Shown here: positions 2,278 through 60,828 of the stretch, one piece after another
Numbering within the stretch: position 1 is the first letter of the stretch
Layout of the letters: each line of letters opens with the position of its first letter
NCBI GenBank assembly: GCA_013265495.1
Contig: MU060796.1
Span: 997,104-1,061,103 of the forward strand
Origin: Vicugna vicugna
Taxonomy: Eukaryota
Direction: 5' to 3'
Length of the DNA: 64,000 nucleotides
Notes under the pieces: generated by a model
Seen by the model: the letters and a program-made list of their open reading frames with translations, nothing else
Told to the model about the DNA's origin: nothing
Databases searched by the model: none
Program-made: the position numbers and the translations under genes

Positions 2278-2421
2278 NNNNNNNNNNNNNNNNNNNNNNN
2301 NNNNNNNNNNNNNNNNNNNNNNNNNNNNNNNNNNNNNNNNNNNNNNNNNNNNNNNNNNNNNNNNNNNNNNNNNNNNNNNNNNNNNNNNNNNNNNNNNNNN
2401 NNNNNNNNNNNNNNNNNNNNN
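2278..2421. other. N-run, 144 nt (masked or unknown sequence)
   Basis: Direct count; unique AT-rich flanks. Confidence 0.99.
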
Positions 2422-3135
2422 CATAATGAATGAATTTTGCCCCTGGGTTTAGGCTTATATCTTGGCCTGATTTTGCATGGAGAAATTCTGCATTATAATG
2501 AAAGGCAAAATGATCACACATTATAACTGCAAGGTTTTTTTTTTATCACTGCTTAGAAGGATCCTACAACTGCCACCAAAACAGGAAAAAAATATATGTA
2601 TATTCCACATAAACAGGCATATGGTGAGATGTATCATTCTTTGAAAGGTGAGAAACCTTGACAATTATCAGCCCTGAAGAAGTAAATAAGAAATTTTATA
2701 ATAGCCAAGTATCACGAAAATCTACCAAATTTTAGGCGAAGGAAGGGTTGCTTAGATTTCTTTTGTCATCTAAACATTCTTGAGGCTGATCTCCTCAGGC
2801 ATTTCTCAAATGGCACATACAAACTAAATCAAATAAAGACTTGTTCTCATTTTCATGAGCTGTTGAGGACCTTTCAAAATTAAACAGAAGCTCCTTCTTC
2901 ACCTTCACTCTTAACCCCAAACTTCTGGGGTAAAAAGTCAAATTGTATTCAACAAACGTATGTGCGTTCTTCCTTGCACCAAATCCTGTGAAAATACAAA
3001 GACAAATCTGGAAGGACTCCTTACTTTCTGGAGCAGAGGATCATAACATCAAATATGAAAGGGGATCTCAGTGATTAGTTTCCTTTTGTAGAAAAAAAAA
3101 AAAAAAAACCCTGAGGTCTAAAAATGGCAAACTCA

Positions 3136-3211
3136 GGGGGAGGGTATAGCTCAGTGGTAGAGTGCATGCTTAGCATACATGAGATCCTGGGTTCAATCCC
3201 CGGTACCACCA

Positions 3212-3242
<31 letters not shown>

Positions 3243-3309
3243 AAACTTCCTTACCTTCCCCTCAAAAAAAAAGAGTTGTAATAAAAAAAATTTTTTAAAT
3301 AAAAAAATT
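3136..3309 (+). mobile_element. Camelid tRNA-Ala-derived SINE (vic-1 type)
   Basis: Head ggggagggtatagctcagtggtagagtgcatgcttagcat...gggttcaatcccc with A and B boxes, (AAAT)n tail, TSD aaaatggcaaactca (3121-3135) / aaaatggcaaataca (3310-3324). Confidence 0.95.
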
Positions 3310-4327
3310 AAAATGGCAAATACATGAAAAGCTCTATTTCCTTACTTTTAAAGCAGGAAAATTTCTACTATTGCCCTCCACCATCCCCTTCCACCAAGTT
3401 CACCCACCCAACCAATGAAGAGGCGGTGTCCACTGATGACGTCAGCTGTTTCCACATGAAATCTGCACCTCCTCCACGGAGGCAGGGCTAGGGCACCTTG
3501 GGAGCCAAACTGAAGTTACCCTTTACCATCCCCAGCACAGATTCCAATTTGAACAACAAATCAGCTGTCCATCACCCAGGACGTTGCACAAAGCATGATA
3601 TTGGCTTCATTCAACAGCTTCTGTTCTTTCACTGACATTTCTGTCGTGCCGGCTTCTACCTTCAATGATCCCTAAGATGAGGCAAGCACGTTCAGCATCA
3701 TCGAAAGAAAACAAAAGTTTCCAAACATTTGCTGGCTCTGGAATTTATGTGTAAGAACTCATGTTTGAAAGGTTTTACTTTTTATGTTAAATGACGACAC
3801 TATAAATCTCACAAACTGCATAAATCAGACTTGACGCCAGCCCCAGGAGTGAGGCTGGGACCGATTTATGATGAGGCACGAGAGAGGAACAGTGTATTTT
3901 ATTTGTTTTACCACCTGGCATTTACATGCAGAGGAGCCTTGGGGAGCCGGCCTGTATGGACCAGGGAACAGTCCACAAGGTTACAATAAATCCACCTGCG
4001 ACGGGCAACCCACTTTGGGTTAAGAACTTGGACTCAAATAACCACAAAGATATGCTGTCTGATGGAAGATTCTTAATCCTGAGTAGAAATAGTGCTGGAT
4101 TGGGAGCCGAGGGTGACGATTCTCAGGCCTTGGTTAGCTTCAAACACTAATTATTATTGTTCATGGAGAGAGTCTTTTGTAGACTTTTTCCATCTTTGTT
4201 ATTGGGAAATTCAAGATCAATATGTAAGATTTTACGGGATGTTTTATGAATTTTAAAATTATGAAAATTTGCCTTCAAGAGTCCCGAGCTTTAAAGGCAT
4301 CTCAGTGAATCTTGTTCTGGGATAATA

Positions 4328-4680
4328 TTCATTTATTAAACACATATTTAATGAACAGCTACTAAGTGGCAGGTGTATCTTCTTGTGGAGTTGACCATCG
4401 AGAGGAGGAAACAGAAAATAAAAGAATAATACTCAGATGAGAATGACTGCTACAGAGGAAAATAAAAAGTGATGGAAGTGCTTTATTAGACAGGATAGTC
4501 AGGCAACATCTCCTTGGTAAGAGGACACTTCATCAGAGACTGAATAAAGGGAAGGAAAGCACCACTGTGGTAACAGAGGTAAGAACATCCAGCCAGTGCA
4601 AAGGCTGGAGTTGGGAGCAAGGTTGACTTCTTCAAGGAAGCCCAGGGGGACCAGGAGGGCGTGGAATAAGTAAGAGAGAG
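4328..4680 (-). mobile_element. L2 LINE fragment (left part)
   Basis: attcatttattaaacacatatttaatgaacagctactaagtggcagg ... cagtgcaaaggctggag. Confidence 0.7.
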
Positions 4681-4682
4681 TA

Positions 4683-5101
4683 GAGGTTTCCCCACTGTCC
4701 ACAAGGAGAGTGTTCCTGTGAAAACTTTCTCAAGTTGAAATAATGTAAGATGAAGAAGCAATCACATTAGGACACATCTTGCTAAGGGACGCACAACATA
4801 CATCCGGGTCAAGCACAGATGCAACTCAAAGCTCTGGCAACTGGATGCGGAGATGCTGAGTATAGTTCCTGGGGAAGGGGGTTGGCGGTGCTCTAACAGT
4901 TCCTGGAAAACAAAAGCAGAAAGGGATTTTCACTTTTCCAATTTTTTTTTCCATAAAAGTGAAAATTCTCTTCAGATTTTCTTGGCTTATCAAAAACAGG
5001 TATTAACATACCTCTTTCATAAAAGCAAAGTGGCATAAAGCAAATTTTCTAAAAGCTTTACAAAAATCTTTCAAAAAAGCTTAATTGACGGGGGATGCCT
5101 G
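4683..5101. mobile_element. TcMar-Tigger-like non-autonomous DNA transposon inserted in L2
   Basis: Degenerate terminal inverted repeats (gaggtttcccc / gggggatgcctg) flanked by TA at 4681-4682 and 5102-5103; L2 sequence on both sides; subfamily not determined. Confidence 0.55.
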
Positions 5102-5103
5102 TA

Positions 5104-5335
5104 ATACCAGACAAGATGGGAGAGGCCATGGGGGGCCAAACCCATGGGAGAATTTGGGCTTTACCTCTGAGTGAGATGGGAAACTTAAGAAAGTTTGAGC
5201 AGAGGGGTAACATGATGTGACCATTGTCTTCTGAACATATCACTCTCTTGTTGGAGGTCAGACCACTGGGAGGCAAAGACAGAAACCAGGAGACCTGCTG
5301 ACACACTATTGCAGAAGTCCAAGCCACAGGTAACG
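5104..5335 (-). mobile_element. L2 LINE fragment (right part)
   Basis: ctctgagtgagatgggaaac...tttgagcagaggggtaacatgatgtga is typical L2 internal sequence. Confidence 0.7.
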
Positions 5336-5948
5336 TAAAGGGCAACAAATTCCTTTGCTCTACCTTAATCTCAACTTGCACCTCATGCATATTTCTCACT
5401 AACCTTTGGACTCATTCTAAGAAAGACAAAATCACAGTTAGACCCAGAGTTTGAGCGCCTTGGATTGTTTGAAAAATGAGCAGTTTCAGAAAATGAAATA
5501 CTAAGTCCAAGGGACATAAGTCCTTTTCCTTCTGAGACATACTAAGGTTGCTGCTGTTCTGTTCATTGTATGATTTTACTAGGACCAGGATGCATCCTAA
5601 GGTGGTAGCATTCTTCCTGATGATTTACCTACAGCCAATTTATTGCCCAGTAGTTTCAACTCCTGGGAGAAGTCTGCTCTGAACGTGTTTACCAATGTGT
5701 CAAGAAGACAGTACGAGAGACCTCATCGGACTTAATTAAAGCCAAACTAGACTTCATAGAAAGAAGGGAGAGAGTACCAAAGAGAGAGGGAGGAGGGGAG
5801 GGGATGAAGGGTGCCCGGCCACATCCTCTTCCCGCAAATTGGTTTCTAGTCGCGTGAGCGTACTGGGAAGAACACTTAGGAGTGATTACTAAGAGAGGAA
5901 GGTTGTGGGGGGGTGCATCGCCCAGACATTGAAGGATGGGGCCAAATG

Positions 5949-6127
5949 NNNNNNNNNNNNNNNNNNNNNNNNNNNNNNNNNNNNNNNNNNNNNNNNNNNN
6001 NNNNNNNNNNNNNNNNNNNNNNNNNNNNNNNNNNNNNNNNNNNNNNNNNNNNNNNNNNNNNNNNNNNNNNNNNNNNNNNNNNNNNNNNNNNNNNNNNNNN
6101 NNNNNNNNNNNNNNNNNNNNNNNNNNN
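5949..6127. other. N-run, 179 nt
   Basis: Direct count; unique flanks. Confidence 0.99.
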
Positions 6128-6763
6128 TCTCCTCTCGCGGTGGTGGTGGCAGGAACACAGAGGGAGTTTAGTTCTGTGGGGTCACGGGGCAGGCAAGGCA
6201 GGCTTCCAAAGTGGGGTTCAAGGACCCGACACTGGGATGGAGAGATGGCATTTCTTTTGTGATTTTCTTCCAAGGTCTCTTCCATTTGTCCTTCTTGGGG
6301 ATGGTTTTCTTATAATTAGCTACTTTTTTCTAAGGGAACACGAAGGAGGTGGAAAAACTCGGAAATGCGGGGGTCATTGTGGGGTACAATTCCTTGAAGC
6401 AAATGAATGTAATTGGAGGTCTCATTAATTCTGAGGCGATGCCCAGGTGCCCTGTCTGCTCCATCAGGAGGGCGGGAGAACTCTCCAGGAGATGCGAGCA
6501 TGTTTGAAAACAGAGAGGGGCAGGCAGCCCCGGCTTCTCCTGCCAAAGAACCTCCCCAGGCTTGGGGGCGGTGAGGGGCGGGGGGGTGGTCCTGGGGTGA
6601 AGAGATGGTGGGAAACACATCTCTCCCACCTCCTCCCACAGCCACAAAGCACACCAGCGCTGTTGATTTCTGTCCCGCTGGTCTGGGCGTTAGAGCAGCA
6701 GCCCGCCAATGCTTGAAAGAAATGTGCCTTGCAATTTACCATCGCCTCTAAATTCGTATTCAG

Positions 6764-6927
6764 NNNNNNNNNNNNNNNNNNNNNNNNNNNNNNNNNNNNN
6801 NNNNNNNNNNNNNNNNNNNNNNNNNNNNNNNNNNNNNNNNNNNNNNNNNNNNNNNNNNNNNNNNNNNNNNNNNNNNNNNNNNNNNNNNNNNNNNNNNNNN
6901 NNNNNNNNNNNNNNNNNNNNNNNNNNN
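6764..6927. other. N-run, 164 nt
   Basis: Direct count; unique flanks. Confidence 0.99.
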
Positions 6928-7470
6928 AAGGTTGGGCTTATGAGAGCGGGAGAGCGGAGGGAAGGGCCTCCCTCTGGTTAGTAATGAGGTCTTTGATGTT
7001 CGATGCAGTTACTCCCTTTATGCTCATCAAGACAGATATTTAGTCCAAGGGAAAAGGAAAAAAGCGCCAAGTTACTCTCTTAAAAGGCAGCCGTGGACCA
7101 TGTACTAAGCTCCACTACTCTTAAAAGCAAACATTTAATCTGTATTTTAAAGGCCTCTCCCAATGCCATCAACCCCCACCTAATTGATTTTTTGTTCTGA
7201 AAGCTCTTGTTCCTGGTGTTCTTGGCACGACTCGTCCCACATTCTTCTGCCCTGTTCCACGCAGCCACACAGGGCTGGCATTGATCTGGGTTGTGCAGCT
7301 GAAGACTCACCAGTTGTTAGAAATTTAAACACTTCCACGCCAGTAGGTAAATGGTCTTGGTCCAAGTGCCTGTGCCCACTCGGTGCCTGGACACCCTAAC
7401 CCTTCCCCAGTTGTCCTCCGGACACAGCAACTAATGGGTTAATGCCTGGCACTCCAGGGGACATGCAGAA

Positions 7471-7795
7471 TGTTATAGGCGAATTATATCTCCCTCTCCC
7501 CAAATTCATATGTCGATGTTAGGACCATTTAGGGAGGTAATTGTTACAGGGAGCCATAAGGATGGGGTCCTAATCAGATAGGATTGGTGTCCTTATAGGA
7601 AAAAGGAGACCCGAGATTGCTCTCCAGAGATAAGATCGTGGAGAAAAGGTCACATGAGGACACAGTGGGAAGGCAGCATCTACAAACCAGAAACCAGCCC
7701 TGCCGGGACCTTGATCTTGAACTTCCAGCCTGCAGAACTGTGAGAAAATACAGTGACATCTCTCACCCCGACCACCCTGACAGCCTCTTAAAGAC
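7471..7795 (+). mobile_element. MLT1A-like ERVL-MaLR solo LTR
   Basis: tgttatagg...ccccaaattcatatgt ... gtcacatgaggacacag ... gaccttgatcttgaacttccagcctgcagaactgtgagaaaata. Confidence 0.8.
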
Positions 7796-7799
7796 TAGG

Positions 7800-8392
7800 C
7801 TTCCTGCTCCAGACTTTCTCCCTCCCCCACACCCACCTCTCTGCAGTCGACATGACTTTCCAAAACTCCAAGCACATCGCTGCCCTGCTTGAAACTCTTC
7901 AGTGGCACTCCATCAGCCTCGGATGGAATCCAACAGCGCCTGCAGGTCCCGCAGGGTCGAGCTTCAGCCTTCCAGCTTTTGTGTTCGCTTTTCCTTGTGC
8001 CAAAACAGCCCTTCCATGCCCTTCCGCTGGCCAGCGCTCACATAGCCTCCCCGGGGACAACCACTCGCACAAGTCTGTGGGGCTGTCATTCTGAGGCCCT
8101 TGAACTCCTCGTGTGGACTCTCGCCTCCCTGGGATGGCTCCTCTGTTGAGAGGTCCACCTTACGATGGATCTGAAATCACCTCCCCATAAGCTCTCCTCT
8201 CTGGTCCTCCTTCCTTCTTACTCTCCTTGTCCCCCAGCAATCTTTGTAGCCTTTTAGGTTTTCCTTCGTTCCGTGGGGCTGAGACAATATCATCCTTCTT
8301 CACTGCTGAATTTCCAGTGCCTACCACGCCTGGCTCAGTAGGCGCTAAGTAAATCTGTACAGAGTAAATGAAGGAAGATTTGGAATAAGATG
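7800..8392 (+). mobile_element. L2 LINE 3' region
   Basis: ccctgcttgaaactcttcagtggc ... gcctggctcagtaggcgctaagtaaatctg...gtaaatgaa. Confidence 0.7.
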
Positions 8393-9340
8393 CTAGAGCT
8401 AGAAGAAGCCTTCGGAAGGCTCAAGTTCCACTTCCTCATTTTACGGGTGAACAAACCAGGGCTCAGCCAAGGAAAGAGAATGCCTCAACGTCACAGGGCA
8501 AGAGAGTGGCCAGGCCAGGCTAGAATCTATTGATCCGAAAGGACTAGGAGCAAAATGGGAAACTCCAGTCCATCTCCGGATTCTCTGAGTAGGGAGCCGA
8601 TAGGTCCTTTTCCCAAAAGCATCACGGGCATCATGCAACCTTAAGTGAATATCTATGCCTGGTCCACTGCCATTTTTTCTAGGGACTGGGATGCAAGATT
8701 GATGAGATTTAAAATGGTGTCGTATTCTGGGCATTCATAACTTGGACTGGAGTGCAGGAAATCCTGCTCATCTCACAGAGGGAGACAAATGTACTCTGGA
8801 AAATTCCCGGAGGGAAGGAGGGCATCCCGGGGAATCTCCATCTACACAGGCAAGTCTGTTCTAAATCAACCAGAGAAAGGGGTCCAGGGTGGTTCCTTCA
8901 CATTCCAGAAGGTTCCTGAAGCAAGTCAGTCTGGTGGAATGGGTGTTTCAAACGGAAGGCAGGAGAGGGGCAGCTGGAATGGCGGTGGAGGCTTCGGGCT
9001 CTCCCTCGCTGGAGAATGGCTTCATCCCAAAATGTGCCTCCCCTCCCTTACCTTGAAGTTCCACTTCTTCCAACAAAGGCAGAGTGAAGGCTGCCTTCAG
9101 GGACTCAAAGAAAATCTCCCACACGCCAACCAAGAGAGAGGGAGGGAGGGAGACTCTCAGAGATTCAGAGAGAGAAAGCTGGATTCCAAGAGAGAGACGG
9201 ACAAAGAGAGTCTAATTAACCCAAAGCAAAGGAATAGAAAGTGAGACAGATGCTCAATGACTTTCAACATACTAATAAAGAAGGAAAAATTTATTCCAAG
9301 AAAAACTTATAAAAGGGAAAGACAAAAAATACATATTACA

Positions 9341-9462
9341 GGGCGGGGGTGGTATAGCTCAGTGGTAGAGTGCATGCCTAGTATGCACGAGGTCCTGTGT
9401 TCAATCCCCAGTACCTTCATTAAAAAAAGGAAATAAACCTAATTACCTCCCCCTCCAAAAAG
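9341..9462 (+). mobile_element. Camelid tRNA-Ala-derived SINE (vic-1 type)
   Basis: ggtatagctcagtggtagagtgcatgcctagtatgcacgaggtcctgtgttcaatccccagtacc, then aaataaacctaattacctcccc tail. Confidence 0.92.
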
Positions 9463-9504
9463 ATACACATTATTTCCCTCTCTCTCCTTCTTTTCCTTTC
9501 TTTT

Positions 9505-9580
9505 GTTTCAGCTGAGAAGACTGAGGCCCAGAGAGGTGAAGTGACTTGCCCACGGCTGCACAGCAGGGCAGAGGTGCAGA
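9505..9580 (-). mobile_element. MIR fragment
   Basis: gactgaggcccagagaggtgaagtgacttgccca. Confidence 0.6.
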
Positions 9581-10457
9581 TACACCTCTGCTGAAGCCTA
9601 ACGCAGGAGCCCTACACCACACCCACGCCACACGACAGGTCAGACCACAGGCAGCGGAGCCGGCAAGGCAGGGTGAGAGTCGGGATACGGCTGTGGAGTT
9701 GCACTCCTGACGAAACTGATGTGTTTGGTACCTCTCGTGGTACATGCATGTCCTCCGCATCGCCCCTGTGTGTGCTTCAGTGTCCATATTGTCAGTTCTT
9801 ATAATGCAGGAATGATAGCAGTATCAGTTCCACAGTTGTGACTTGAGAATTAATTGTGATGCGGCCAATGCCTGGCATTGAGTAGGAACTCAACAAAATG
9901 TTACCTTTTGAGGCTGCCATCAGCTTTTCCCATTCTTCTTTCATGATTCCTTTCCAAGACCTGCGATCTTGGGAGGCTTTGCAAGAATGCCTTTGATAGC
10001 TACAATGTTGTTAACTCACCTCCCCGGGCTGGCGTGGGGCTCGACTAAGCTGACAGCTGTAAAGCGCCTGCAACAAGGGCTGGTATAAAGCAAGTACCAA
10101 GAGCTGCTTCTTTCGTTACGGAGAGCGATGTATAGGCACATATGTACACCGACTCTTTCATTCAGTAATTCAATAAGCACCTGAATTCAATAAGCACCTA
10201 TATATTTATGAATGACTTTTACCTCCGTCTATAAAGACTCATACTTCTGGGCTTCATTTCCTGCCGTGTTATTTGGGGAGATTCTCCACGTGGATCTTTT
10301 CTGAGGATGGAGGAACAAGCATTCTGGGAAGGTGGCACAAGGAGAGCCATTTTTCCTGGTGTCACAGGGGAGAAACTTCTTAATCCAGACCGCGCTGACT
10401 TCTCCCCTCCCAGATCAGCTCAGACCCCCTCTCCTCGAAGGCAAGGCAAAGGCAGGC

Positions 10458-10653
10458 NNNNNNNNNNNNNNNNNNNNNNNNNNNNNNNNNNNNNNNNNNN
10501 NNNNNNNNNNNNNNNNNNNNNNNNNNNNNNNNNNNNNNNNNNNNNNNNNNNNNNNNNNNNNNNNNNNNNNNNNNNNNNNNNNNNNNNNNNNNNNNNNNNN
10601 NNNNNNNNNNNNNNNNNNNNNNNNNNNNNNNNNNNNNNNNNNNNNNNNNNNNN
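10458..10653. other. N-run, 196 nt
   Basis: Direct count; unique flanks. Confidence 0.99.
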
Positions 10654-10801
10654 AAAGTTTTCGGGCGGGTGATTTAAGGAGGCCGGACCAGCCAGCACCC
10701 TCGACTCCTCAGTTGCTGGGACTTGGACAAAAGAATGAACTCTGAACTTTTCCTTTGACGGATGGAGGTCATTAAAACCATGATGGGGGCTCCTTCAAAG
10801 G

Positions 10802-10933
10802 NNNNNNNNNNNNNNNNNNNNNNNNNNNNNNNNNNNNNNNNNNNNNNNNNNNNNNNNNNNNNNNNNNNNNNNNNNNNNNNNNNNNNNNNNNNNNNNNNNN
10901 NNNNNNNNNNNNNNNNNNNNNNNNNNNNNNNNN
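10802..10933. other. N-run, 132 nt
   Basis: Direct count; unique flanks. Confidence 0.99.
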
Positions 10934-12194
10934 ATTGACAGGGGCCAGAAGTGCGCCGACATTCCCTCCACCACCCATTCAATGGGTGGCTGCCCCAATT
11001 GTTCCCAAGCAGGGGCCACCACAATAAATGCTCGGGGTCCTTTCATGGGTACCCTGGACCAGCGCGAGAATCCAGAGAAAGCTGCACCACCAACTCCCAC
11101 TTTAAATTCCATCCATTTTAATAAAGTGCCGAGAGACCTCCAAGCAGCTTAAAATATTAAAGGTTTCTTTTAAACATCTGGAAGATAACATCTCATTACT
11201 AGATGGTGCTCGAGGTTATTAATATGTAATCAGAGCTAATCCCATCAACACAAACAAACAGCAAACAAAAGCCCTTCCCCGAGAAGCATCATCTCCTCAG
11301 AACACAGAAGAGCCCCCAACAGAGCTTCCAGGCGACACGGCCCCCCCAACCCCCATTCCCACCACAGCACAACCAGCTGGGTCCACATGCTGCCCCTGGA
11401 GGGGCAAACCCAGAAACGTTGACCTCCTGGCAGTCAGCAGGACAAGTCAGCCAAATAGATTGACTGCAAATGACTTGAGTCATCGAAGTTCAACCATGAA
11501 GGGAAATGAAAGCTCAGGAAATTTCACCTCCCTCTTCTATTTTTTTTTTTTTTATAAAAGGTGTTTTTGCTTTTCTCGAAAGGGTCAGAAATGTTGATCC
11601 CAAAGGTCTGAGCGGGAATATAAATGGATGTGGAGAAACTGGAAGCTGGGTCTGGGGGGAGCAGTGTGCTGAATGTCTCGTCAGGATCACTTGCCCGGCA
11701 CGTTACACACACATGCACGCGGGATGCCGAATTCGGCACCCCTCTCCTGCCAGGGCAATGGTTATTAAGGGTAACACGATCGGATGAGAAGGCAGCACAT
11801 GGGCAACCACAGAGCCCAGAGGAAACAGCTGTGCAGACAAATAAATGAAGGTCCTGCCTCCCTAAAAGGCACCCACAAGGCAGAGCCACATCCTTTGCAT
11901 TGTCCGAGGACAAGTCATTGCGGGTTCTCCAGCAGTCGGTGGTGTCAGCAAGGCTGGAGGAAAAAGTGATGACTTGCCGGCCCCAGGAAGAGGCTCCGGA
12001 AGCACCTCGCTGATGGAAGTCCACTTTAACCCTTCCATCCCTCCTTCTCTGACAGTGAAACTGAGACAAAGGAGCAGGTTGACCTCTCTTGAGTCATAGA
12101 AAAGACTAGAGTCAGGAGAAATAATAAGGACTTTCTCTCCAGATCCCCAAGGAAAATGGTCTGGTTCATTCTAGCAGTTAACTGTGGTGTAACA

Positions 12195-13590: not shown

Positions 13591-13738
13591 NNNNNNNNNN
13601 NNNNNNNNNNNNNNNNNNNNNNNNNNNNNNNNNNNNNNNNNNNNNNNNNNNNNNNNNNNNNNNNNNNNNNNNNNNNNNNNNNNNNNNNNNNNNNNNNNNN
13701 NNNNNNNNNNNNNNNNNNNNNNNNNNNNNNNNNNNNNN
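13591..13738. other. N-run, 148 nt
   Basis: Direct count; followed by a CpG-rich unique stretch. Confidence 0.99.
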
Positions 13739-17710: not shown

Positions 17711-17857
17711 GTGGGGGAGAGTATAGCTCAAGTGGTAGGGCACATGCTTAGCATATACAGGGTCCTGGTTCAATTCCCAGTACCTTCTCTAAAAATTAAA
17801 TAAATAAGTAAATCTAATTACCCCCTAAATTTTTTTAAAATAAATAAGACATTTTTC
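17711..17857 (+). mobile_element. Camelid tRNA-Ala-derived SINE, more diverged copy
   Basis: gggggagagtatagctcaagtggtagggcacatgcttagcat...ggttcaattcccagtacc; TSD aaaagttacactga (17696-17709) / agaagttgcactga (17858-17871). Confidence 0.9.

Positions 17858-20933: not shown

Positions 20934-20973
<40 letters not shown>
20934..20973. repeat. (AC)20 microsatellite
   Basis: Perfect dinucleotide run, counted directly. Confidence 0.98.
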
Positions 20974-22100: not shown

Positions 22101-22380
22101 ATGTGTTGGCTTCCAACTGGTGTCAGGCACTGTACTGACAAAAATCGCCACCACCACAAGAGCCCACCAGGTGTCCATCACCCATCAAGGGACAGCTGCC
22201 ATTTTCTAATCATAAAGAATAAAGCTAATGCACAGAGCTCTTTGGAATTATCATCTCCATCATCTGCAAAGCTGAAGTGTGTGTCTCAGCAAAGCCCCGT
22301 CCACCTTTCCCCTCTTTTCTCTACCTTGATTCTAGAAAGAGAAGGGGGAGGGTGGGGCATGGCCTTACCAAATTTCTCCC

Positions 22381-22632
22381 NNNNNNNNNNNNNNNNNNNN
22401 NNNNNNNNNNNNNNNNNNNNNNNNNNNNNNNNNNNNNNNNNNNNNNNNNNNNNNNNNNNNNNNNNNNNNNNNNNNNNNNNNNNNNNNNNNNNNNNNNNNN
22501 NNNNNNNNNNNNNNNNNNNNNNNNNNNNNNNNNNNNNNNNNNNNNNNNNNNNNNNNNNNNNNNNNNNNNNNNNNNNNNNNNNNNNNNNNNNNNNNNNNNN
22601 NNNNNNNNNNNNNNNNNNNNNNNNNNNNNNNN
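22381..22632. other. N-run, 252 nt
   Basis: Direct count. Confidence 0.99.
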
Positions 22633-22869
22633 GCTGGGGGAAAAAAGGGGAAAAAAAAGTTACCATTAACATTTTTATTTCTTTAAAAAAAAAAAAAACA
22701 ACACACATAGCAGTCTCTTTTTAATGAGTGTGTTCACAACCTCTTTTTGAACCATTACCAGGGCTCCATAGGACACCAGGTGAAGTGATGGAAGCTGTGA
22801 GGCTTACTGACAAGAGAAGCAAGGTGGGAGGAAATTGCATCACCCACCCCCCCATCCCCCCCCAACCTC

Positions 22870-23041
22870 NNNNNNNNNNNNNNNNNNNNNNNNNNNNNNN
22901 NNNNNNNNNNNNNNNNNNNNNNNNNNNNNNNNNNNNNNNNNNNNNNNNNNNNNNNNNNNNNNNNNNNNNNNNNNNNNNNNNNNNNNNNNNNNNNNNNNNN
23001 NNNNNNNNNNNNNNNNNNNNNNNNNNNNNNNNNNNNNNNNN
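22870..23041. other. N-run, 172 nt
   Basis: Direct count; separated from the next run by a 20-nt island. Confidence 0.99.
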
Positions 23042-23061
23042 ATGAAAGCCGTTGCCTGCTG

Positions 23062-23306
23062 NNNNNNNNNNNNNNNNNNNNNNNNNNNNNNNNNNNNNNN
23101 NNNNNNNNNNNNNNNNNNNNNNNNNNNNNNNNNNNNNNNNNNNNNNNNNNNNNNNNNNNNNNNNNNNNNNNNNNNNNNNNNNNNNNNNNNNNNNNNNNNN
23201 NNNNNNNNNNNNNNNNNNNNNNNNNNNNNNNNNNNNNNNNNNNNNNNNNNNNNNNNNNNNNNNNNNNNNNNNNNNNNNNNNNNNNNNNNNNNNNNNNNNN
23301 NNNNNN
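23062..23306. other. N-run, 245 nt
   Basis: Direct count. Confidence 0.99.
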
Positions 23307-23504: not shown

Positions 23505-23945
23505 GTCACAGGGATCTTGGTGGCTCGTGGCTTAGGCAAGTTCGAATCCTGACTCAGCCACTTACTGACTGTGTGATTTTGGGCCGATACATCCTTAGGC
23601 TCAGTTTCTTCATCTGTAAAATGGGGGTCGTGACTGCTGTTCTTCAGGGTCACTACCATTGGGCAGTCTCTGGACTGCACCCAGGTGCCCAACCAAGGGG
23701 ATGGGTGGGGGCTGGATTCCAGCCCCTATCCACTTGGCCGCCAGGGATGGGGCTGGGCCACATCCTCCCAGGAAGGAGCGTCTTCCCTAATTCAGGTGCT
23801 GAACGACCAAGCAGCCCCAGCCGACCTCACCGGGAGGTTACGAGCTTTAAAATGAAATAATGCAGGCAAAGCACTAGAGTGACGTCTGGTACCTAGTAAA
23901 TGCCCTGATTTCATTATGATGGTGATGGTGGTGATGATGATGATG
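23505..23945 (+). mobile_element. MIR in two pieces (about 23505-23645 and 23835-23945) ending in a (GAT/GGT)n tail
   Basis: ttcgaatcctgactcagccacttactgactgtgtga...ctcagtttcttcatctgtaaaatgggg; later aaagcactagagtgacgtctggtacctagtaaatg. Confidence 0.65.
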
Positions 23946-24534: not shown

Positions 24535-24660
24535 CAATTCTGGCTTCAAATCAGGGCTCTCTACTACCATCTGGGTGCCCTGGTGCAAGTCACATTCCTG
24601 CTCTGAGCCTCAGTTTCCTCATCTGTAAAATGGGAATAGAAAGAATACCCACTTGTCAAA
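24535..24660 (+). mobile_element. MIR fragment
   Basis: ctctgagcctcagtttcctcatctgtaaaatgggaata. Confidence 0.75.
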
Positions 24661-42526: not shown

Positions 42527-42658
42527 NNNNNNNNNNNNNNNNNNNNNNNNNNNNNNNNNNNNNNNNNNNNNNNNNNNNNNNNNNNNNNNNNNNNNNNNNN
42601 NNNNNNNNNNNNNNNNNNNNNNNNNNNNNNNNNNNNNNNNNNNNNNNNNNNNNNNNNN
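42527..42658. other. N-run, 132 nt
   Basis: Direct count; unique flanks. Confidence 0.99.
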
Positions 42659-45465: not shown

Positions 45466-45469
45466 TTTA

Positions 45470-46084: not shown

Positions 46085-46220
46085 CTTTTTTTTTTAATTT
46101 TATTTTAGGGGGAGGTAATTAGGTTTCTTTCTTTATTTTTTTAATGGATGTACCAGGGATTGAACCCAGGACCTCATACATGCTAAGCATACACTCTACC
46201 ACTGAGCTATACCCTCCCCC
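46085..46220 (-). mobile_element. Camelid tRNA-Ala-derived SINE (vic-1 type)
   Basis: Reverse complement reads gggggagggtatagctcagtggtagagtgtatgcttagcatgtatgaggtcctgggttcaatccctggtacatcc; TSD tgataattttt(tt)aatt at 46068-46084 and 46221-46235. Confidence 0.95.
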
Positions 46221-46235
46221 TGATAATTTTTAATT

Positions 46236-46560
46236 ATAGTTTTTATAACTACCTCCATGATACAGGTAGGATTGCCCCTTTGTTTACAGAGGAGGAAACT
46301 GAGGCATGAAAAATGTAGGTAACCTTTCCAAGGTCATGGAGCCATTTCAGCTCAGTTCATAACCATCTGAATTGAGACTATAACAGCTGACTGTGTGAGG
46401 CATTCTTCTCAATGCTTTCCATGTCTTATCTTATCTGCAACGAGGTCCTATGGGACAAGCACCATTATTCATCCCCATTTTACAGACGGAGAAATTATGG
46501 CATAGAATGTCACTTCCCTGAGGTTGCACAGCCACTAAGTGGAGGAGCCCTGATCTCATT
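46236..46560 (-). mobile_element. Two MIR fragments
   Basis: tttacagaggaggaaactgaggcatg; catccccattttacagacggagaaa. Confidence 0.65.
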
Positions 46561-48868: not shown

Positions 48869-48869
48869 C

Positions 48870-53689: not shown

Positions 53690-54600
53690 ATCAATATTTA
53701 TTAAGCACTTGCTGTATGCCCGGCACTGTGCTGAGAGTTGTTAGAAACCACCAAACAGACTGGGCCCCCATCTAGGCTATCTGGGGAGGCTGTTATTAAT
53801 CAGAGAATCATACCAGTGAGATAAATACATAATTAAAAGCCAAGGCCTGTGCTATGAATAAATGAAGAACATGATGTAATTAAAAATGGAAAATGAGACA
53901 CAGGTTTTAGGTGGTTGAGGGAGAGGGCATCAAGGAAGGTCCCTCTGCTGAGGAAGTGACATTTAGTAGGAAGCCAGGCAAGGTTGGACTGAAGAGCATT
54001 TTAGGCCGAGAGATCAGCTTGCATGAAGATTCTGACATTAGAAAACACCTGAGACTTTAGAGCAAGAGAGAGAAGGCCTGTTGTGGCTGAACAAGTTGCT
54101 GCGTTGGGAGAGAGAGATTGCAGGTGAGGCCATCTGAGGGACCTAGATATGCAGCGGTCATAGAAAGTATGTCTGGACCGTAGCCACCGTGGCCCAAAGT
54201 AGGGCAGGCCCCAGAACCCCGCAGTGACCTCAAAGGGAGCCTGTGTAGCTGCCCGAGCGAATGTTTCTTGGGGCTTATGTATCCACTGGGCTCCTGCTGA
54301 GTGCCTCAAGCCAATCCATTTACTCCTCACCAGACATAAGTTGAACACATATTCCAGACCATGAGATTCAACAGTGAATAAGGCATAGCCCCTGCCTTCA
54401 GATAGCTCCTCAGCTGTAGTAGAAATTTTGTCCCAAATTCAAATAGTTATAAGACAGTGTGTTAAGTGTGACCATCAGGATAGCTCAGCTTGGAAGAAAT
54501 CATGGATGTCTTCCTGGAGGTGGAAACATGTCCACATTTTGGAATTTGTTAAGGGGAAGAAAAGGCCACTCCAGGCAGAGGGTATAAAGCATTTATAGGC
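53690..54600 (-). mobile_element. L2 LINE fragments
   Basis: caatatttattaagcacttgctgtatgcccggcactgtgctgagag ... ggaaggtccctctgctgaggaagtgacattt; second L2 3' piece from about 54300. Confidence 0.75.
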
Positions 54601-54620
54601 AATGGCACTTCAGTTCTAAT

Positions 54621-54781
54621 CTGTAGTTCATAGTCTATCACACATGAGAATGACCTGGAAAGCTTGGAAAAATTGGGATATGCAGGCTTTGCCCTCCAGA
54701 GATTCTGATTTAATTAGCCGGGGTGGTGAGGGGGAGTGGAGCCTGGATGATTCTCAAGTGCAGCCAGGTTTCAGAACCCTG
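54621..54781 (+). mobile_element. MER5-type hAT-Charlie DNA transposon
   Basis: gagaatgacctggaaagctt...ccctccagagattctgatttaatt ... ggatgattctcaagtgcagccaggtttcagaaccctg. Confidence 0.7.
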
Positions 54782-55439
54782 TCCCTGTTAGTTGTTAGTC
54801 ACAATAAGAAGTTTGGAAGCCGTTGCCCATTTGTCACCCAAGAGGCCTGTTATTTTGCTACCAGGATGTTTGGGATCTGCCCCCAAAGTCCAGAGCAGCC
54901 ATGGGGTAACCTCAGGACAACCACTCCCTATGCCCCAGCCTGGGCAGGACAGTTCGCTCAACCATCTCATCAGTCATGACGAAGAATTTCTGGCTGGGGC
55001 AGTGGAAAGTGAAGGCAGTCCAAGGCAAAGAGTAGGGGGAGGCAGGAGGTGGGCAGGAGGGGTGCACAGCCTCTGCTATACTGTGGGTCTCGGGCCCCCG
55101 CGCTGGCCTTCCAGGCTGCAGGTGCCCACCTGGAAACCGGACTCAGGTACCGATGCCCCAGCATCAGGCATTCCTGCTCCAGATTCACCATTTTGCCCTG
55201 TCCATGGACTGTTATTTTACCTACTGTTTCTTATGGCTTAGTTAAATGTATTTCAAAAGAAAACTTTGTATCACATGGATATTTGGAAATGGAAAGCCAG
55301 TATTCTTTGTCCTCAATAAAAGGCAAACTTAAGAGTAAATCTGACATTTTAAACTAATGCTATGAATGTCGGCTTAGATGCTGTTACCTACTGCAACCTC
55401 TGTGCCTGAAGCCTGCTCTGTCTTCGTTGGTTTTTGGTT

Positions 55440-55695
55440 TTGGGTTTGTTTTTTTTTTTTGGTGTTTATTGTGGTAAAATACACATAACATAAATTTTAC
55501 CATTTTAACCACTTTTACGTGTCCAGTTAGTACAGGGGCATTAAGTGTGCTCTCGTTGTTGGGCACCTATTACCACCATTCACCTCTAGAATTTCTTTCA
55601 TCCCTCCAAACCGAAACTCTGTATCCATTAAACAGTAATCCCCATTCATTCCTCCTCCCAGCCCCTGGCAACCACCATTTTATTTTCTGTCTCTA
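55440..55695 (-). mobile_element. L1MA/MB-like 3' end
   Basis: tttattgtggtaaaatacacataacataaattttaccattttaacc ... ccagcccctggcaaccacca. Confidence 0.85.
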
Positions 55696-55711
55696 TAATC
55701 TGTCTTTGTTT

Positions 55712-56053
55712 TTTGGTGGTTTTTTTTCATTGAAGTACAGTCAGTTACAATGTGTCAGTTTCTTGTGTACAGCACAATGTCCCAGTCATGCATATGCATA
55801 CATGTATTTGTTTTCGTATTTTTTTCATTAAAGGTTATTACAAGGTATTGAACATAGTTTCCTGTGCTTTACAGAAGAATTTTTTTAAATCTATGTTTAT
55901 ATATAGTGGCTAACATTANNNNNNNNNNNNNNNNNNNNNNNNNNNNNNNNNNNNNNNNNNNNNNNNNNNNNNNNNNNNNNNNNNNNNNNNNNNNNNNNNN
56001 NNNNNNNNNNNNNNNNNNNNNNNNNNNNNNNNNNNNNNNNNNNNNNNATGAAG
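55712..56053 (-). mobile_element. Younger lineage-type L1 insertion, 5'-truncated, containing an N-run
   Basis: Poly-T then cattgaagtacagtcagttacaatgtgtcag...gtggctaacatt; 16-nt TSD taat(c/g)tgtctttgttt at 55696-55711 and 56054-56069, followed by aaaa. Confidence 0.85.
55919..56047. other. N-run, 129 nt (inside a TSD-bounded L1 insertion)
   Basis: Direct count. Confidence 0.99.
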
Positions 56054-57749
56054 TAATGTGTCTTTGTTTAAAAGGAGATTTAAAAAGAGTTGGGAAAGTG
56101 TTAAGGGCATATTAGCGTCAAATTGAGACACTCCTTTTCACTTAATTATTATTGAAAGAGGGTTGAAAGACAACAGTTCACTCTCTGGAATTCTACATCA
56201 CAGTGTCACCCAGTGCCTCTCCGTGCCTGGCCTGGACCCTTGGTATTCACCCCACTGGTTGTGGACACTGTGTGTGTGATCCCTGGGTTTCTCTTCCAGC
56301 AACGTGGCCTTCCGGCAAGCACATGATAAAATTGGAATCTAACACACTGGAGAGCAAAGGGATGAGAACTGTCCCCCTAGAGGAACCGTGATTTCCTTTC
56401 CTGCTCCGAACAATGCTGAGAAAAATTATTCCCATTTTCCCAAAGAGGAAACTCTAGCTCATCAAGACAGTCATTTACCCACAGTGACATAAGGAGCCCA
56501 TGCCAGGGCTTTCTGAGCCAACGATAAGCCTCTGTCCTTTCCACCCCACCATACTGATCTCCATAGGCAAGTTTCAAGAGAAAGCCAGCCCGAGAATGTG
56601 AACAATGACAGGGACCATCAGCAGAGTGGCGGCTGGGAGGCTCTGTAAATTCAGTCCGCACTCAGCCAGAGGACTCCTAACCTGCTCATCATCGTCAATC
56701 AGATGGGTGCATGCCTGGATAAGCCTCTTCCCAGTGCATAAGTAGTGCTGTCACTCTCTGGCCATGGGGCCACCAAGCTGGCCCTTTAATAAATGCACAC
56801 AGGAGAAGCTGGCGTTCAGAGGATGCGCCCCCACTACACATGGTAGGGGGAGGGAGCCCCCAGCTCCCTCCTAGGCCTTCACCCTGGCAGACAGCTGTGC
56901 ATACTCACTCTGCATTTGGGCCTTTCAGCCCTGCAGGATTCTGATGCAAATGGATTTGACGCAAACACAGAGCAGCTCCCTCCCAGCTGAGTGCCCCAGT
57001 TGGCTGCCAGTTTCCAGCATCCTCCCTGGATTGCTTACCAACAGCTTTTGTGTTTGTTTAAATAACAGATAGGTAGGGACCTCAGTTAAATATCTTCCGA
57101 GAGAGGCCAAGATTGGAAGTGTTTCCTTCCCCTTCACCCTCCCCACCCCCCGACAGCAGCTTCTGTGTCTGCAACGGCTTCCAGACAGTTCTTTGGCTGG
57201 TCTCCATTTATTTGCTAGGTGGAGATGGATCTATATGAATAAAGCTTGCACATTAGTAGGAATCTCATGCATTTCCAGGCTGAGGGATGCAGCCAGGTAC
57301 CCAGCCTGACCCTGCAGTCACCTTATTATCGATGCCTTCCCCAGGGTGAGATGGCTTATACGCACTGACCTCAGAGAACTCACACACACAAACATCTCAA
57401 CAAAGAGTTGATCACGTTCTTATTTTTAAAAATCTACCATTGCCTTTCATTCATCTTTTCAGGTAGGAGCTTTCCTTACTATAATGAAACTGACTTCTTC
57501 AAAATGAGTCTCAGATCTACATTTTGCCCACAAGGGGCTAACCACCAGATATTGAGAGAAAAGTGTTCTCCTCCAGGCAGTCAGGAGATGATGGGGTGAT
57601 GAATGCAGCCTTCAGAAGAGGGAACCAGGAGTCAGGCTCCAGCCTGGAGGCCTGGGGTGCCTGGTACAGATGGGGAATGGGGCTCTCTGTCTGCAGGTGT
57701 CTGGGGATTGGGAGAGCCTCCTTCACCCCCATCAGGGGCTGCAGTGGCC

Positions 57750-57862
57750 ACATAACTATGTCCCAGAGCTTAGGAGCAGGGACCTTGGAGTCAAACAGAT
57801 CTGAGTCCAAACCAGAGTCCCCTCTCTGGGGCTTCTCTGAGCCTCAGCTCCTTTGTCATCTT
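57750..57862 (+). mobile_element. MIR fragment
   Basis: ttggagtcaaacagatctgagtccaaacc...ctctgagcctcagctcctttgtc. Confidence 0.65.
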
Positions 57863-57934
57863 GAAGAAGCTTGAGGCTTCAGAGAATCCATGCTAACCCC
57901 TTGTCCCAATTCCTGACATACAGTAATGGCTGGC

Positions 57935-58450
57935 TACCATGGCAGACACTGTAGGATGCCTTCTCCACACCATCCATCCTGCCCTCTCTTGCTAGCTGAG
58001 AGATCTGATTTTGTTCAGGGTGGCCCTGGGCCCAGCACTCCACCAACCATGGCAGGCCAGCTGCTAGAGAGTTGTGCTCCCAGCACACCTTGCAGCTAGA
58101 GGTGGTCACATGACTTAGATCTGCCCAACGGCACAGAAGGGGTCATGTGCCACCAGCTTCCTGGGAAGCTCTTCCTGCTCAGCCCCATTCCTTCCCACTT
58201 TTAATCTGCCACCTTGTGACCATTTTATGAGTCTAAGAATGAAAGGCCAGCACACTGAGAATAGCATAAGGGAATGGAAAAAGAGCCTGGGTCCTCCATG
58301 CTATGGTTGGACTCCCTGCCCAAACTGGAAGTGCCCTTCCCCAGACCTCTCGGTGTGCAATATGATTGAATGCTTGCATTGCTTCAGCCTGTTGGTTGGG
58401 TCTTACATTTTATCCTGCTACTTGTAGCCTCAAGCATTCCTAACCGTTGT
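57935..58450 (+). mobile_element. MLT1 (K/L-like) LTR
   Basis: atggcagacactgtaggatgcc ... ccttgcagctagaggtggtcacatgact ... tacttgtagcctcaagcattcctaac. Confidence 0.65.
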
Positions 58451-58879
58451 TCCCAGACCTACCCGTATTTACCTTCCTGCCTGGGGATCTGGGGAGAACC
58501 ACAGCAAAATGCATTTCCAAGTAAGATAATCTACATTTTTAAGATAATTATTTTCTTGACTCAGCAGTTTCAGTGGTTCCAAGATACCAGCTTCAAAACC
58601 CAAAGTAATTCCCATCCTGGGCTGTGACAAGAGCCACGTGGGGGAACTGAGCAGAGGTGGGCAAGCTCTGGGTGTCTGTGGGAAGCTGGCTTCCTCCTCA
58701 CCACAGTCTACGCCAGATGCTTCTGGTCCAGTGAGTTCGGGCAAGCCCCTGACTCCTCCCTCCATACACCTCTGTTTCTTTAGCTGTAAAAATGGGAATC
58801 ATGATACCTACTTACAAAGTTGCTGACAAGACCCTTCTCCAGATAGGGCCCTTCGAAAGCAGAAATCAGCGCCCTGTCT

Positions 58880-59395
58880 ACACGCCTGGGTTCAAAGGTC
58901 CTCCTCCACCTAGCGCCTGCCGACTTCCTGAGCCTCATCGCTCACAGCTCACACATGCCACTCCAAGCTCAGCCACACTGAATTCCCTCAGCTGCTCAGA
59001 CACCCCATGCTCTTTCTCCTCCATGCTGTCCCCCATGCCTGGAATGCTCATTCTGTGGCCTGTCACCTGGCTGGTCCCTGCTTCGTTTTAGCCTCGGCTT
59101 AAAAGTCATGTGCTCCTGGAAGCTTTCCTTGACCCTGCTCACACATATATGTGCACACACGTGCACGCACACACACACACACACACACTCATCCTTTCTA
59201 AGGAACTCTGCTCTGTGGTTCCATTATCTGTTGGTCCCATTAGCTGCCTTCCCCACAGCCTGTGAAATGTCTAAGGGCAGGAACCAGATCCCTCAGGCTC
59301 ACCACTGAACCCCTAGCATCTAGCACAGGCCTGACACACAGTAGGCACTTTGTAAGTATTTATTAATGGAATGAACACTCACAGGAAGTAATAAA
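58880..59395 (+). mobile_element. L2 LINE 3' region
   Basis: gctgtcccccatgcctggaatgctc ... catctagcacaggcctgacacacagtaggcactttgtaagtatttattaatggaatgaa. Confidence 0.7.
59141..59188. repeat. Imperfect (CA)n/RY microsatellite
   Basis: acacatatatgtgcacacacgtgcacgcacacacacacacacacac. Confidence 0.85.
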
Positions 59396-59400
59396 TGGAA

Positions 59401-59635
59401 TTTATTGTATTGTATAGTATATATAGTTAAAATAAACAATGTATAATAAATAAATATACAATAATAAATAAATAATATTTTATATATTATTTATTTAAAT
59501 ACAATTATATATTATTTAAATATAATCATATTATTTATTAAATATAATTATATATTATTTGTTATTTATATATTATACACTATATACATATTATGATATA
59601 TGATACATATTATACATAATTATTATTATATAAAA
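59401..59635. repeat. AT-rich low-complexity tract (TA/ATA/ATT mosaic)
   Basis: About 235 bp almost entirely A/T. Confidence 0.9.
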
Positions 59636-59734
59636 AGGAATTTAGCACAGTTGCAGGCACTTGACAGACATGCAGTCAATTCACATCTGCTAAGAGACAG
59701 CATCTCAGCAGGGGTTAAGCACCCCCCCATGAAG

Positions 59735-59945
59735 CAGTTCTGCCTGGGTCTCAATTCCAGCTGAGCCACTTATGAGCTGTGTGACCTGGGGGAGTCACTT
59801 CACCTCTCTGAGTCTCAGTTTCCTCACCTACAAATGAGAATCCTAGTCATAATAACCTTATAGAATTATTATGAAAATTAAACCAGTCGATAAAAATAAA
59901 GTATCAGTACCTAGTAAGCGTTGGCTATTATTATTATTGTTATCC
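59735..59945 (+). mobile_element. MIR SINE
   Basis: gagctgtgtgacctgggggagtcacttcacctctctgagtctcagtttcctcacctacaaatgag. Confidence 0.8.
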
Positions 59946-60149
59946 AAACTATTATTAGGAAAGAGCTAGGCAACTGAGTGCTGGAAAAGGCCAATCCGCC
60001 CGGGACCCCCCAGCCTGGGTTTTCTCCATCACCCAGATTCTGCCACCCCCATTGCTGCCCACTCTGCGCCCCTGACAGTAAGGCCACCTACCCAACCCAC
60101 GGTACGCCCTCCGCCCATCCCCAGCCTTCCTGCCTGTCCACCAGCGGTC

Positions 60150-60312
60150 ACAGACACACTCGCCTGATTGATAAAGTCCCTGTCTGGTCATTTACGATCT
60201 GGCTGCTGAAGAGGCAGCTCCTGCCAGCTCGAAAAGCAATTAATCTGCAAACAAGCTGGGCGACAGCAGGCCTGGGCATTGCAGTCTCGGGCCGCGGCCG
60301 CTCCGGAGAGCA
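60150..60312. promoter_or_regulatory. Candidate enhancer flank with PBX-HOX-type sites
   Basis: TGATTGAT (60165-60172), TCATTTACGA (60188-60197), GCAATTA (60236-60242), CpG-rich end abutting an N-run. Function is inferred. Confidence 0.45.
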
Positions 60313-60508
60313 NNNNNNNNNNNNNNNNNNNNNNNNNNNNNNNNNNNNNNNNNNNNNNNNNNNNNNNNNNNNNNNNNNNNNNNNNNNNNNNNNNNNNNNN
60401 NNNNNNNNNNNNNNNNNNNNNNNNNNNNNNNNNNNNNNNNNNNNNNNNNNNNNNNNNNNNNNNNNNNNNNNNNNNNNNNNNNNNNNNNNNNNNNNNNNNN
60501 NNNNNNNN
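60313..60508. other. N-run, 196 nt
   Basis: Direct count; 52-nt island before the next run. Confidence 0.99.
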
Positions 60509-60560
60509 ACTGTGGTCCAGGCCGAGACGCTAATGGTTATTTAATGCCCTCATCAGTGTT

Positions 60561-60828
60561 NNNNNNNNNNNNNNNNNNNNNNNNNNNNNNNNNNNNNNNN
60601 NNNNNNNNNNNNNNNNNNNNNNNNNNNNNNNNNNNNNNNNNNNNNNNNNNNNNNNNNNNNNNNNNNNNNNNNNNNNNNNNNNNNNNNNNNNNNNNNNNNN
60701 NNNNNNNNNNNNNNNNNNNNNNNNNNNNNNNNNNNNNNNNNNNNNNNNNNNNNNNNNNNNNNNNNNNNNNNNNNNNNNNNNNNNNNNNNNNNNNNNNNNN
60801 NNNNNNNNNNNNNNNNNNNNNNNNNNNN
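60561..60828. other. N-run, 268 nt
   Basis: Direct count. Confidence 0.99.

What the first reader, a model, noticed from the sequence alone, without database searches (positions are those of the whole stretch)
2278..60828. Thirteen N-runs behave like masks over conserved non-coding elements, outlining a hidden enhancer cluster
Seen: runs of 144, 179, 164, 196, 132, 148, 252, 172, 245, 132, 129, 196 and 268 nt. Two pairs are separated by islands of only 20 nt (23042-23061) and 52 nt (60509-60560), too small to be contigs. Twelve runs lie in repeat-free sequence although much of the window is repeat, they group into clusters (6-7, 10.5-10.9, 22.4-23.3, 60.3-60.8 kb), and none has matched AG/GT (or AC/CT) exon borders. 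Known: gene deserts around developmental regulators carry arrays of 100-300 bp deeply conserved elements. Inferred: the runs were blanked because of very high cross-species identity, so they mark the cores of long-range enhancers for a gene outside this window.
Basis: partly seen in the sequence, partly recalled or inferred. Interest (0 to 1): 0.75.

Follow-up and report, generated by a model that had tools for sequence, protein, structure and literature searches.

The report
Masked conserved stretches, not new biology
The thirteen N-runs are real and look like deliberate blanking of stretches very similar to human DNA in a gene-poor, repeat-poor mammalian region. What lies under them (probably mostly conserved non-coding elements, at least one probable exon) could not be read, and such clusters are already well catalogued.

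Summary
Observation confirmed. There are 13 N-runs of 129-268 nt at the stated places, with unmasked islands of 20 and 52 nt, and they are clustered (P about 0.01).

They behave like purposeful masks rather than scaffold gaps:
- the lengths fall in a narrow band with a floor near 129 nt;
- the islands are too small to be contigs;
- the flanks have normal complexity and GC, with no left/right duplication;
- only one run follows L1-3'-end-like sequence as read by eye; no in-window repeat family lies within 140 nt of any run.

The operators state that Ns here are gaps or deliberate masks and forbid filling them, so neither conservation nor enhancer function could be tested.

Indirect evidence fits a cluster of conserved non-coding elements. 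The unmasked sequence has no coding signal, no Pfam hit in the 20 longest ORFs and no real CpG island. Young repeats are few and MIRs are many. TAAT cores and CpGs are mildly enriched beside the masks.

"Much of the window is repeat" is not measurable here: only 7% is repeated within the window, so repeat avoidance carries no weight. "No exon borders" also fails: run 22381-22632 has a strong minus-strand acceptor 1 nt outside and a GTAAGG donor 12 nt outside, making a candidate 265-nt exon. Minus-strand T>A and G>C skew suggests the window lies inside a minus-strand transcription unit rather than a pure desert.

Other first-reader notes on this genome report N-runs over conserved exons and elements. 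Low interest: a data-preparation artefact over a known kind of element.

The parts
2278..2421 (.). N-run, 144 nt; AT-rich unique flanks (GC 0.34-0.36), no CpG in either flank
5949..6127 (.). N-run, 179 nt; first of a group of five (5.9-13.7 kb) whose flanks have GC 0.47-0.60 and raised CpG
6764..6927 (.). N-run, 164 nt; the borders allow weak splice readings on both strands (plus: CAG at the left border and AAG|GTTGGG at the right; minus: donor ATG|GTAAAT 24 nt outside), so they decide nothing
10458..10653 (+). N-run, 196 nt; weak plus-strand acceptor (exon start 10441, score 8.0) and donor (intron start 10669, score 6.5) would give a 228-nt exon; borderline after correction for 26 tests
10802..10933 (.). 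N-run, 132 nt, 148 nt after the previous run
13591..13738 (.). N-run, 148 nt, at the edge of the only weak CpG-rich patch (13.4-14.4 kb; GC 0.56-0.61, CpG o/e 0.64-0.77); 4 CpG in the 25 nt to its right
22369..22633 (-). Candidate 265-nt minus-strand exon, with its body hidden under N-run 22381-22632. It has a branch-like TTAAT, a 24-nt polypyrimidine tract, CAG at 22636-22634, and donor TTG|GTAAGG with GT at 22368-22367
   Evidence: acceptor 12.0, local p 0.002; donor 7.8, p 0.025; only 10 of 9229 AG sites score this high; sequence view.
22870..23306 (.). Two N-runs (172 and 245 nt) split by a 20-nt island, so effectively one 437-nt masked element, 237 nt upstream (minus sense) of the candidate exon
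42527..42658 (.). Isolated N-run, 132 nt; CAG on the minus strand directly at the right border but no donor
55919..56047 (.). N-run, 129 nt. It directly follows L1-3'-end-like sequence that lacks a poly(A) tail; the right flank is unique. This is the run most open to being an ordinary gap
60313..60828 (.). Two N-runs (196 and 268 nt) split by a 52-nt island, so effectively one 516-nt masked element. The island is closed in all three minus-strand frames and in two of three plus-strand frames, so it is not one continuous minus-strand coding exon. The flanks are rich in TAAT-type sites, with 5 CpG in the left 25 nt
   Evidence: frames read directly from the island sequence

Best explanation
The N-runs are letter-for-letter masks that the data preparers laid over stretches nearly identical to human DNA. 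They are not holes in the assembly. In this window most of them probably cover conserved non-coding elements of about 130-520 nt. These sit in a non-coding, transposon-poor, MIR-rich region of the kind called a genomic regulatory block. That region probably lies inside a long intron of a gene transcribed from the minus strand. At least one mask (22381-22632) more likely covers a conserved minus-strand exon. Shown: the runs, their sizes, their clustering, the ordinary flanks, the absence of coding signal around them, and the splice signals at one run. Inferred: that likeness to human DNA is the masking criterion, that the hidden parts are non-coding, and that they act as enhancers.
For: Sizes are 129-268 nt with a floor near 129 and islands of 20 and 52 nt. 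There is no flank duplication and flank complexity is normal. Flank GC is 0.29-0.60, not extreme. Clustering has P about 0.01. Notes from other windows of the genome put N-runs on conserved exons and elements (unverified leads).

Support for a non-coding reading:
- open frames running outward from the borders are no longer than at random places (median 145 against 152 nt), and 5 of 13 run lengths are multiples of 3;
- acceptor-ORF-donor candidates are equal on both strands and look like junk;
- the 20 longest ORFs have no Pfam hit;
- there is no true CpG island;
- polypyrimidine content upstream of the masks is not clearly raised.

Support for functional constraint next to the masks: TAAT cores 27 against 16.4 expected, P 0.04; CpG in the adjacent 25 nt 24 against 10.5 expected, P 0.00015.

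Region type: only 2-7% is in-window repeat and there are at least 25 MIR cores. Depletion of transposable elements and the presence of such elements in introns of bystander genes are described for genomic regulatory blocks (PMC5728398).

Minus-strand unit: T>A 5.5% (z about 9) and G>C 2% on the minus strand. This is the direction expected for a coding strand (PMC2839347).
Against: The hidden letters were not read, so conservation itself is unproven. The masking rule is inferred, not documented. The CpG excess comes from a few runs and is not significant when counted per flank (12 of 26 against 32% background, P 0.10). The TAAT enrichment is uncorrected for the nine motifs tried. Strand skew can also come from replication (PMC2839347). 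Masks that extend past splice sites would hide exon borders, so the absence of splice signals at 10-11 runs does not exclude exons. Run 55919-56047 follows repeat-like sequence directly and may be a true gap.
Confidence: 0.55

Rival explanations
1. Most of the masks hide exons, coding or untranslated, of one or more highly conserved genes or a conserved long non-coding RNA. Under this reading they are not enhancers.
For: Run 22381-22632 has a strong minus-strand acceptor and donor just outside the mask. Run 10458-10653 has a weak plus-strand pair. Minus-strand skew points to a transcription unit. Pyrimidine content upstream in minus orientation is slightly raised, 0.572 against 0.509, P 0.05. 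Other windows of the genome are noted to have N-runs on the exons of PTP4A2, ABR and ASAP1 (leads only). RNA-library contigs touch 22712-22852, and RNA runs of other organisms hold 2 of 22 words of 22633-22869.
Against: Ten or eleven runs lack paired splice signals within 25 nt. A multi-exon gene would also have many exons shorter than 129 nt. If the mask has a length floor these should be visible unmasked, yet no coding-like exon was found and there is no strand excess and no Pfam hit. The 52-nt island is closed in all minus-strand frames, and the merged elements of 437 and 516 nt are long for internal exons. The RNA contigs are 102-154 nt at depth 2-6 without joints, and the tool says they are not shown to be transcribed.
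Confidence: 0.2
2. The runs are ordinary scaffold gaps of estimated length in a short-read assembly. In that case their position says nothing about conservation.
For: The scan's program labels them as assembly gaps. Run 55919-56047 follows L1-3'-like sequence. A few borders touch homopolymer or low-complexity sequence, namely the C-run left of 22870 and the G/A run right of 22632.
Against: All 13 lengths lie between 129 and 268 nt, with none short and no conventional fixed size. The 20- and 52-nt islands are too small to be contigs. The flanks are unique, of normal complexity and moderate GC, with no left/right overlap. The runs are clustered (P about 0.01). CpG is raised next to them. Sixteen independent DNA runs hold 92-94% of the sampled words of 7000-10400, the stretch between two of the N-runs, so the neighbourhood assembles easily.
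Confidence: 0.12

Closest known systems
Clusters of conserved or ultraconserved non-coding elements in genomic regulatory blocks (UCNEbase, PMC3531063; review PMC5728398)
   Same: Elements of 100-500 nt sit in groups over tens of kilobases in non-coding sequence poor in transposable elements. They may lie in introns of bystander genes. Homeodomain-type TAAT cores are mildly enriched at their edges.
   Different: Conservation is only inferred from the fact of masking. No target gene, synteny or enhancer activity was established, and the locus was not identified.
Highly conserved exons with conserved flanking intron sequence (for example ultraconserved alternative or 'poison' exons; from my own knowledge, not checked in a paper here)
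   Same: The candidate 265-nt minus-strand exon at 22369-22633 has a long polypyrimidine tract and a 437-nt masked element 237 nt upstream in the intron.
   Different: There are no spliced reads and no gene identity. The exon body is hidden, so neither coding capacity nor a stop codon can be checked.
Estimated-length scaffold gaps in short-read assemblies
   Same: Both are runs of N of irregular length.
   Different: Here the length band is narrow with a floor, the islands are tiny, the flanks are unique and of moderate GC, and the runs are clustered.

Membership tests
Conserved non-coding element (CNE/UCNE) cluster | High sequence identity across distant vertebrates over 100-200 nt or more | not testable with these tools
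   No vertebrate DNA collection was available even for the flanks.
Conserved non-coding element (CNE/UCNE) cluster | Non-coding: no exon, no open frame, no splice borders | tested here: inconclusive
   The flanks carry no coding signal. Ten or eleven runs lack paired splice sites, but 22381-22632 has a strong pair and 10458-10653 a weak one.
Conserved non-coding element (CNE/UCNE) cluster | Clustered arrangement in a region depleted of transposable elements | tested here: met
   Clustering has P about 0.01. Only 2-7% of the window is detectable as repeat and no LINE ORF was found. This is a lower bound, made without a repeat library.
Conserved non-coding element (CNE/UCNE) cluster | Synteny with a developmental regulator gene as target | not testable with these tools
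   The locus could not be identified. The window has no recognisable protein-coding sequence.
Transcriptional enhancer | Activity in a reporter assay, or enhancer chromatin marks | not testable with these tools
   No such data were available. The only hints are motifs: TAAT cores 27 against 16.4, P 0.04, uncorrected.
Ordinary assembly gap | Flanks end in repeats, low complexity or extreme GC; lengths conventional or widely spread | tested here: not met
   Flank entropy and GC are normal at nearly all borders, and all lengths are 129-268 nt. Possible exception: 55919-56047.
Internal exon (run 22381-22632 only) | Acceptor with polypyrimidine tract and donor consensus on one strand at a compatible distance | tested here: met
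   The minus-strand acceptor scores 12.0 (10 of 9229 AG sites score as high) and the donor GTAAGG scores 7.8. The joint local p is about 5e-5, or about 0.001 after 26 tests.
Internal exon (run 22381-22632 only) | Spliced transcripts joining it to other exons | tested here: inconclusive
   There are no joints in RNA-library contigs laid on 22633-22869. Reads that match human DNA are dropped by the tool, so absence proves nothing.

The most novel reading that the evidence does not exclude
The masks might outline an unannotated unit: a very highly conserved minus-strand exon at 22369-22633, for instance a regulated cassette or non-coding RNA exon. It would be embedded among ultraconserved intronic elements that control its splicing rather than acting as distal enhancers.
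Probability: 0.07. Interest if true: 0.35.

Novelty: already known. Interest (0 to 1): 0.15.

Why it matters
Mainly as housekeeping for the scan. In this genome copy, N-runs of about 130-600 nt in unique sequence should be read as purposeful masks over human-like, and therefore conserved, sequence. They may cover exons or non-coding elements, and they are not assembly gaps or biological oddities. The biology beneath is of a well-catalogued kind, so an orthologous human or mouse annotation would settle it at once. Nothing here opens a new question.

Tried and rejected
1. Repeat avoidance as an argument. In-window repeats cover only 2-7% of the window, so avoidance has no statistical weight. No repeat library was available, although MIR, tRNA-like SINE and L1-3'-like families were mapped.

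2. Identifying the locus through proteins. No coding-like exon was found, the 20 longest ORFs gave no Pfam hit, and short ORFs in the AT-rich zones show nothing LINE-like. I therefore did not spend the large protein searches.

3. Rfam. It found only three tRNA-like SINE heads.

4. RNA evidence. The second, on the N-free 22633-22869, gave three short low-depth contigs without joints, which is uninformative. One loose end printed by the tool runs towards the mask; I did not use or copy it.

5. Flank duplication, frame continuity and run length modulo 3 gave no signal.

6. GC rise just outside the borders, reported for conserved non-coding elements: 0.512 against 0.478, P 0.08, not significant.

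7. PBX-HOX (TGATNNAT) and TAATTA motifs are not enriched within 100 nt of the borders.

8. Earlier notes of the scan gave no checked follow-up on the masking rule.
Full report
**The observation**

They are 129-268 nt long and total 2357 N, with unmasked islands of 20 nt (23042-23061) and 52 nt (60509-60560). Five of the twelve spacings are under 700 nt, against P about 0.01 under random placement. No run has AG/GT or AC/CT exactly at both borders. These parts of the observation stand.

**Continuity and frame, the test asked for first**

- Left and right flanks share no direct or inverted overlap beyond shuffled controls at 11 testable runs. One run (22381-22632) shows a slight inverted excess, 11.5 against a shuffle maximum of 9.0.
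- Border sequence has normal dinucleotide entropy, apart from a C-run left of 22870 and a G/A run right of 22632.
- Flank GC ranges from 0.29 to 0.60.
- Open frames running outward from the borders are no longer than at random places (median 145 against 152 nt).
- Five of 13 run lengths are multiples of three, which is chance.

Whether the N count equals the true distance could not be tested.

**Masks or gaps?**

All lengths fall in a narrow band with a floor near 129 nt, and the excess above that floor falls off the way a length threshold would produce. No run is short and none has a conventional gap size. Islands of 20 and 52 nt cannot be contigs. They are what a similarity-based mask leaves where a match breaks.

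Sixteen independent DNA runs from three coded organisms hold 92-94% of the sampled words of 7000-10400, the stretch between two of the N-runs, so the neighbourhood assembles easily. Notes from other windows of this genome put N-runs on exons of conserved genes and on conserved-looking elements; these are unverified leads.

The exception is 55919-56047, which follows L1-3'-end-like sequence with no poly(A) tail and may be a real gap.

**The repeat argument fails as stated**

Only 2% of the window is self-similar by blastn, and 7.4% by sensitive tile-against-window search. I mapped at least 25 MIR cores, four tRNA-like SINEs and five copies of an L1-3'-like family. None of the 20 longest ORFs has a Pfam hit.

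These are lower bounds made without a repeat library. On what I can measure, though, the window is repeat-poor, so thirteen runs missing the repeats is what chance gives.

**Exons or non-coding elements?**

A position-weight scan for splice sites within 25 nt outside each border, on both strands, was scored against the window's own background.

- **One strong case.** Run 22381-22632 has, on the minus strand, a branch-like TTAAT, a 24-nt polypyrimidine tract and CAG ending 1 nt outside the mask. The acceptor scores 12.0, and only 10 of 9229 AG sites in the window reach that. A TTG|GTAAGG donor lies 12 nt outside the other border (score 7.8). Joint local p is about 5e-5, or about 0.001 after 26 tests. 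This defines a candidate 265-nt minus-strand exon at 22369-22633.
- **One weak case.** Run 10458-10653 has a weak plus-strand pair that would give 228 nt.
- **One ambiguous case.** Run 6764-6927 can be read weakly on either strand, which shows how little such readings weigh.
- **The rest.** The remaining runs have no paired signals, and pyrimidine content upstream of the masks is not clearly raised (minus orientation 0.572 against 0.509, P 0.05).

Several points argue against 'all are exons of one gene'. No coding-like unmasked exon exists: candidates are equal on both strands and look like junk. Yet a multi-exon gene should show about as many exons under 129 nt as above it. The 52-nt island is closed in all three minus-strand frames. 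The merged elements of 437 and 516 nt are long for internal exons.

**Hints of function next to the masks**

- TAAT/ATTA cores within 100 nt of the borders number 27 against 16.4 expected (P 0.04, one of nine motifs tried).
- CpGs in the adjacent 25 nt number 24 against 10.5 expected (P 0.00015). The excess is carried by a few borders, mainly 13738 right and 60313 left. Counted per flank it is not significant (12 of 26 against 32%, P 0.10).
- The window has no real CpG island, only a weak patch at 13.4-14.4 kb.

**Context**

The minus strand has T>A by 5.5% (z about 9) and G>C by 2% (z about 3.4) across the window. This is the direction expected of a coding strand in germline-transcribed mammalian DNA, although replication can add to it (PMC2839347). 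The window is therefore more likely a long intron of a minus-strand gene than a pure desert. Conserved non-coding elements in the introns of bystander genes are a standard part of the regulatory-block picture (PMC5728398). The orientation also agrees with the candidate exon.

**RNA**

Words of the unmasked 22633-22869 occur in a few RNA libraries, at a share of 0.32 or less. RNA runs of two other coded organisms hold 2 of 22 words. Laying four of these runs gave only three contigs of 102-154 nt at depth 2-6 over 22712-22852. They carry three shared differences and no joints, and the tool warns that this does not show transcription. The result is compatible with intron or DNA carry-over and decides nothing.

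**Verdict**

At least one run is better read as an exon. 'Enhancers for a gene outside the window' remains inference.

The masks are a product of data preparation, and the underlying class, clusters of conserved non-coding elements, is thoroughly catalogued. This is therefore a low-interest finding. The scan has noted the same pattern on other pieces of this genome.

Noticed in passing
window 22369-22633 (-): Candidate 265-nt minus-strand exon. It has a very strong acceptor (polypyrimidine tract plus CAG) and a GTAAGG donor just outside N-run 22381-22632. Its body is masked and the gene is unknown.
   Followed up: partly
window 1-64000: Window-wide strand asymmetry: on the minus strand T exceeds A by 5.5% and G exceeds C by 2%. 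T>A is strongest at 1-40 kb and G>C at 40-64 kb. This suggests minus-strand germline transcription or a replication skew domain.
   Followed up: partly
window 3133-3234, 9345-9454, 17713-17829, 46104-46223: Four copies of a young SINE with a tRNA-like head (ARAGORN calls three of them Ala or Thr; Rfam tRNA scores 43-48 bits). One is followed by an (AAAT)n tail.
   Followed up: no
window, 25 places (e.g. 23542-23633, 24546-24642, 46467-46555, 59753-59840): At least 25 MIR-core copies in 64 kb, a high density of this ancient repeat alongside very few young repeats.
   Followed up: no
window 55456-55918: L1-3'-end-like sequence runs straight into N-run 55919-56047 without a poly(A) tail. Its first 300 nt belong to a five-copy family (33330, 39528, 51336, 55464, 63037). 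This is the one run that may be a true gap or an insertion boundary.
   Followed up: partly
window 7480-7740: An old interspersed repeat.
   Followed up: no
window 22712-22852: RNA-library contigs from two runs share three differences from the window (22767 C>T, 22768 A>G, 22778 A>G). This is probably another individual or a close relative, not editing.
   Followed up: no
window 59430-59632 and 20934-20973: A complex AT-rich tandem-repeat block (periods 7-43) and an (AC)20 microsatellite.
   Followed up: no
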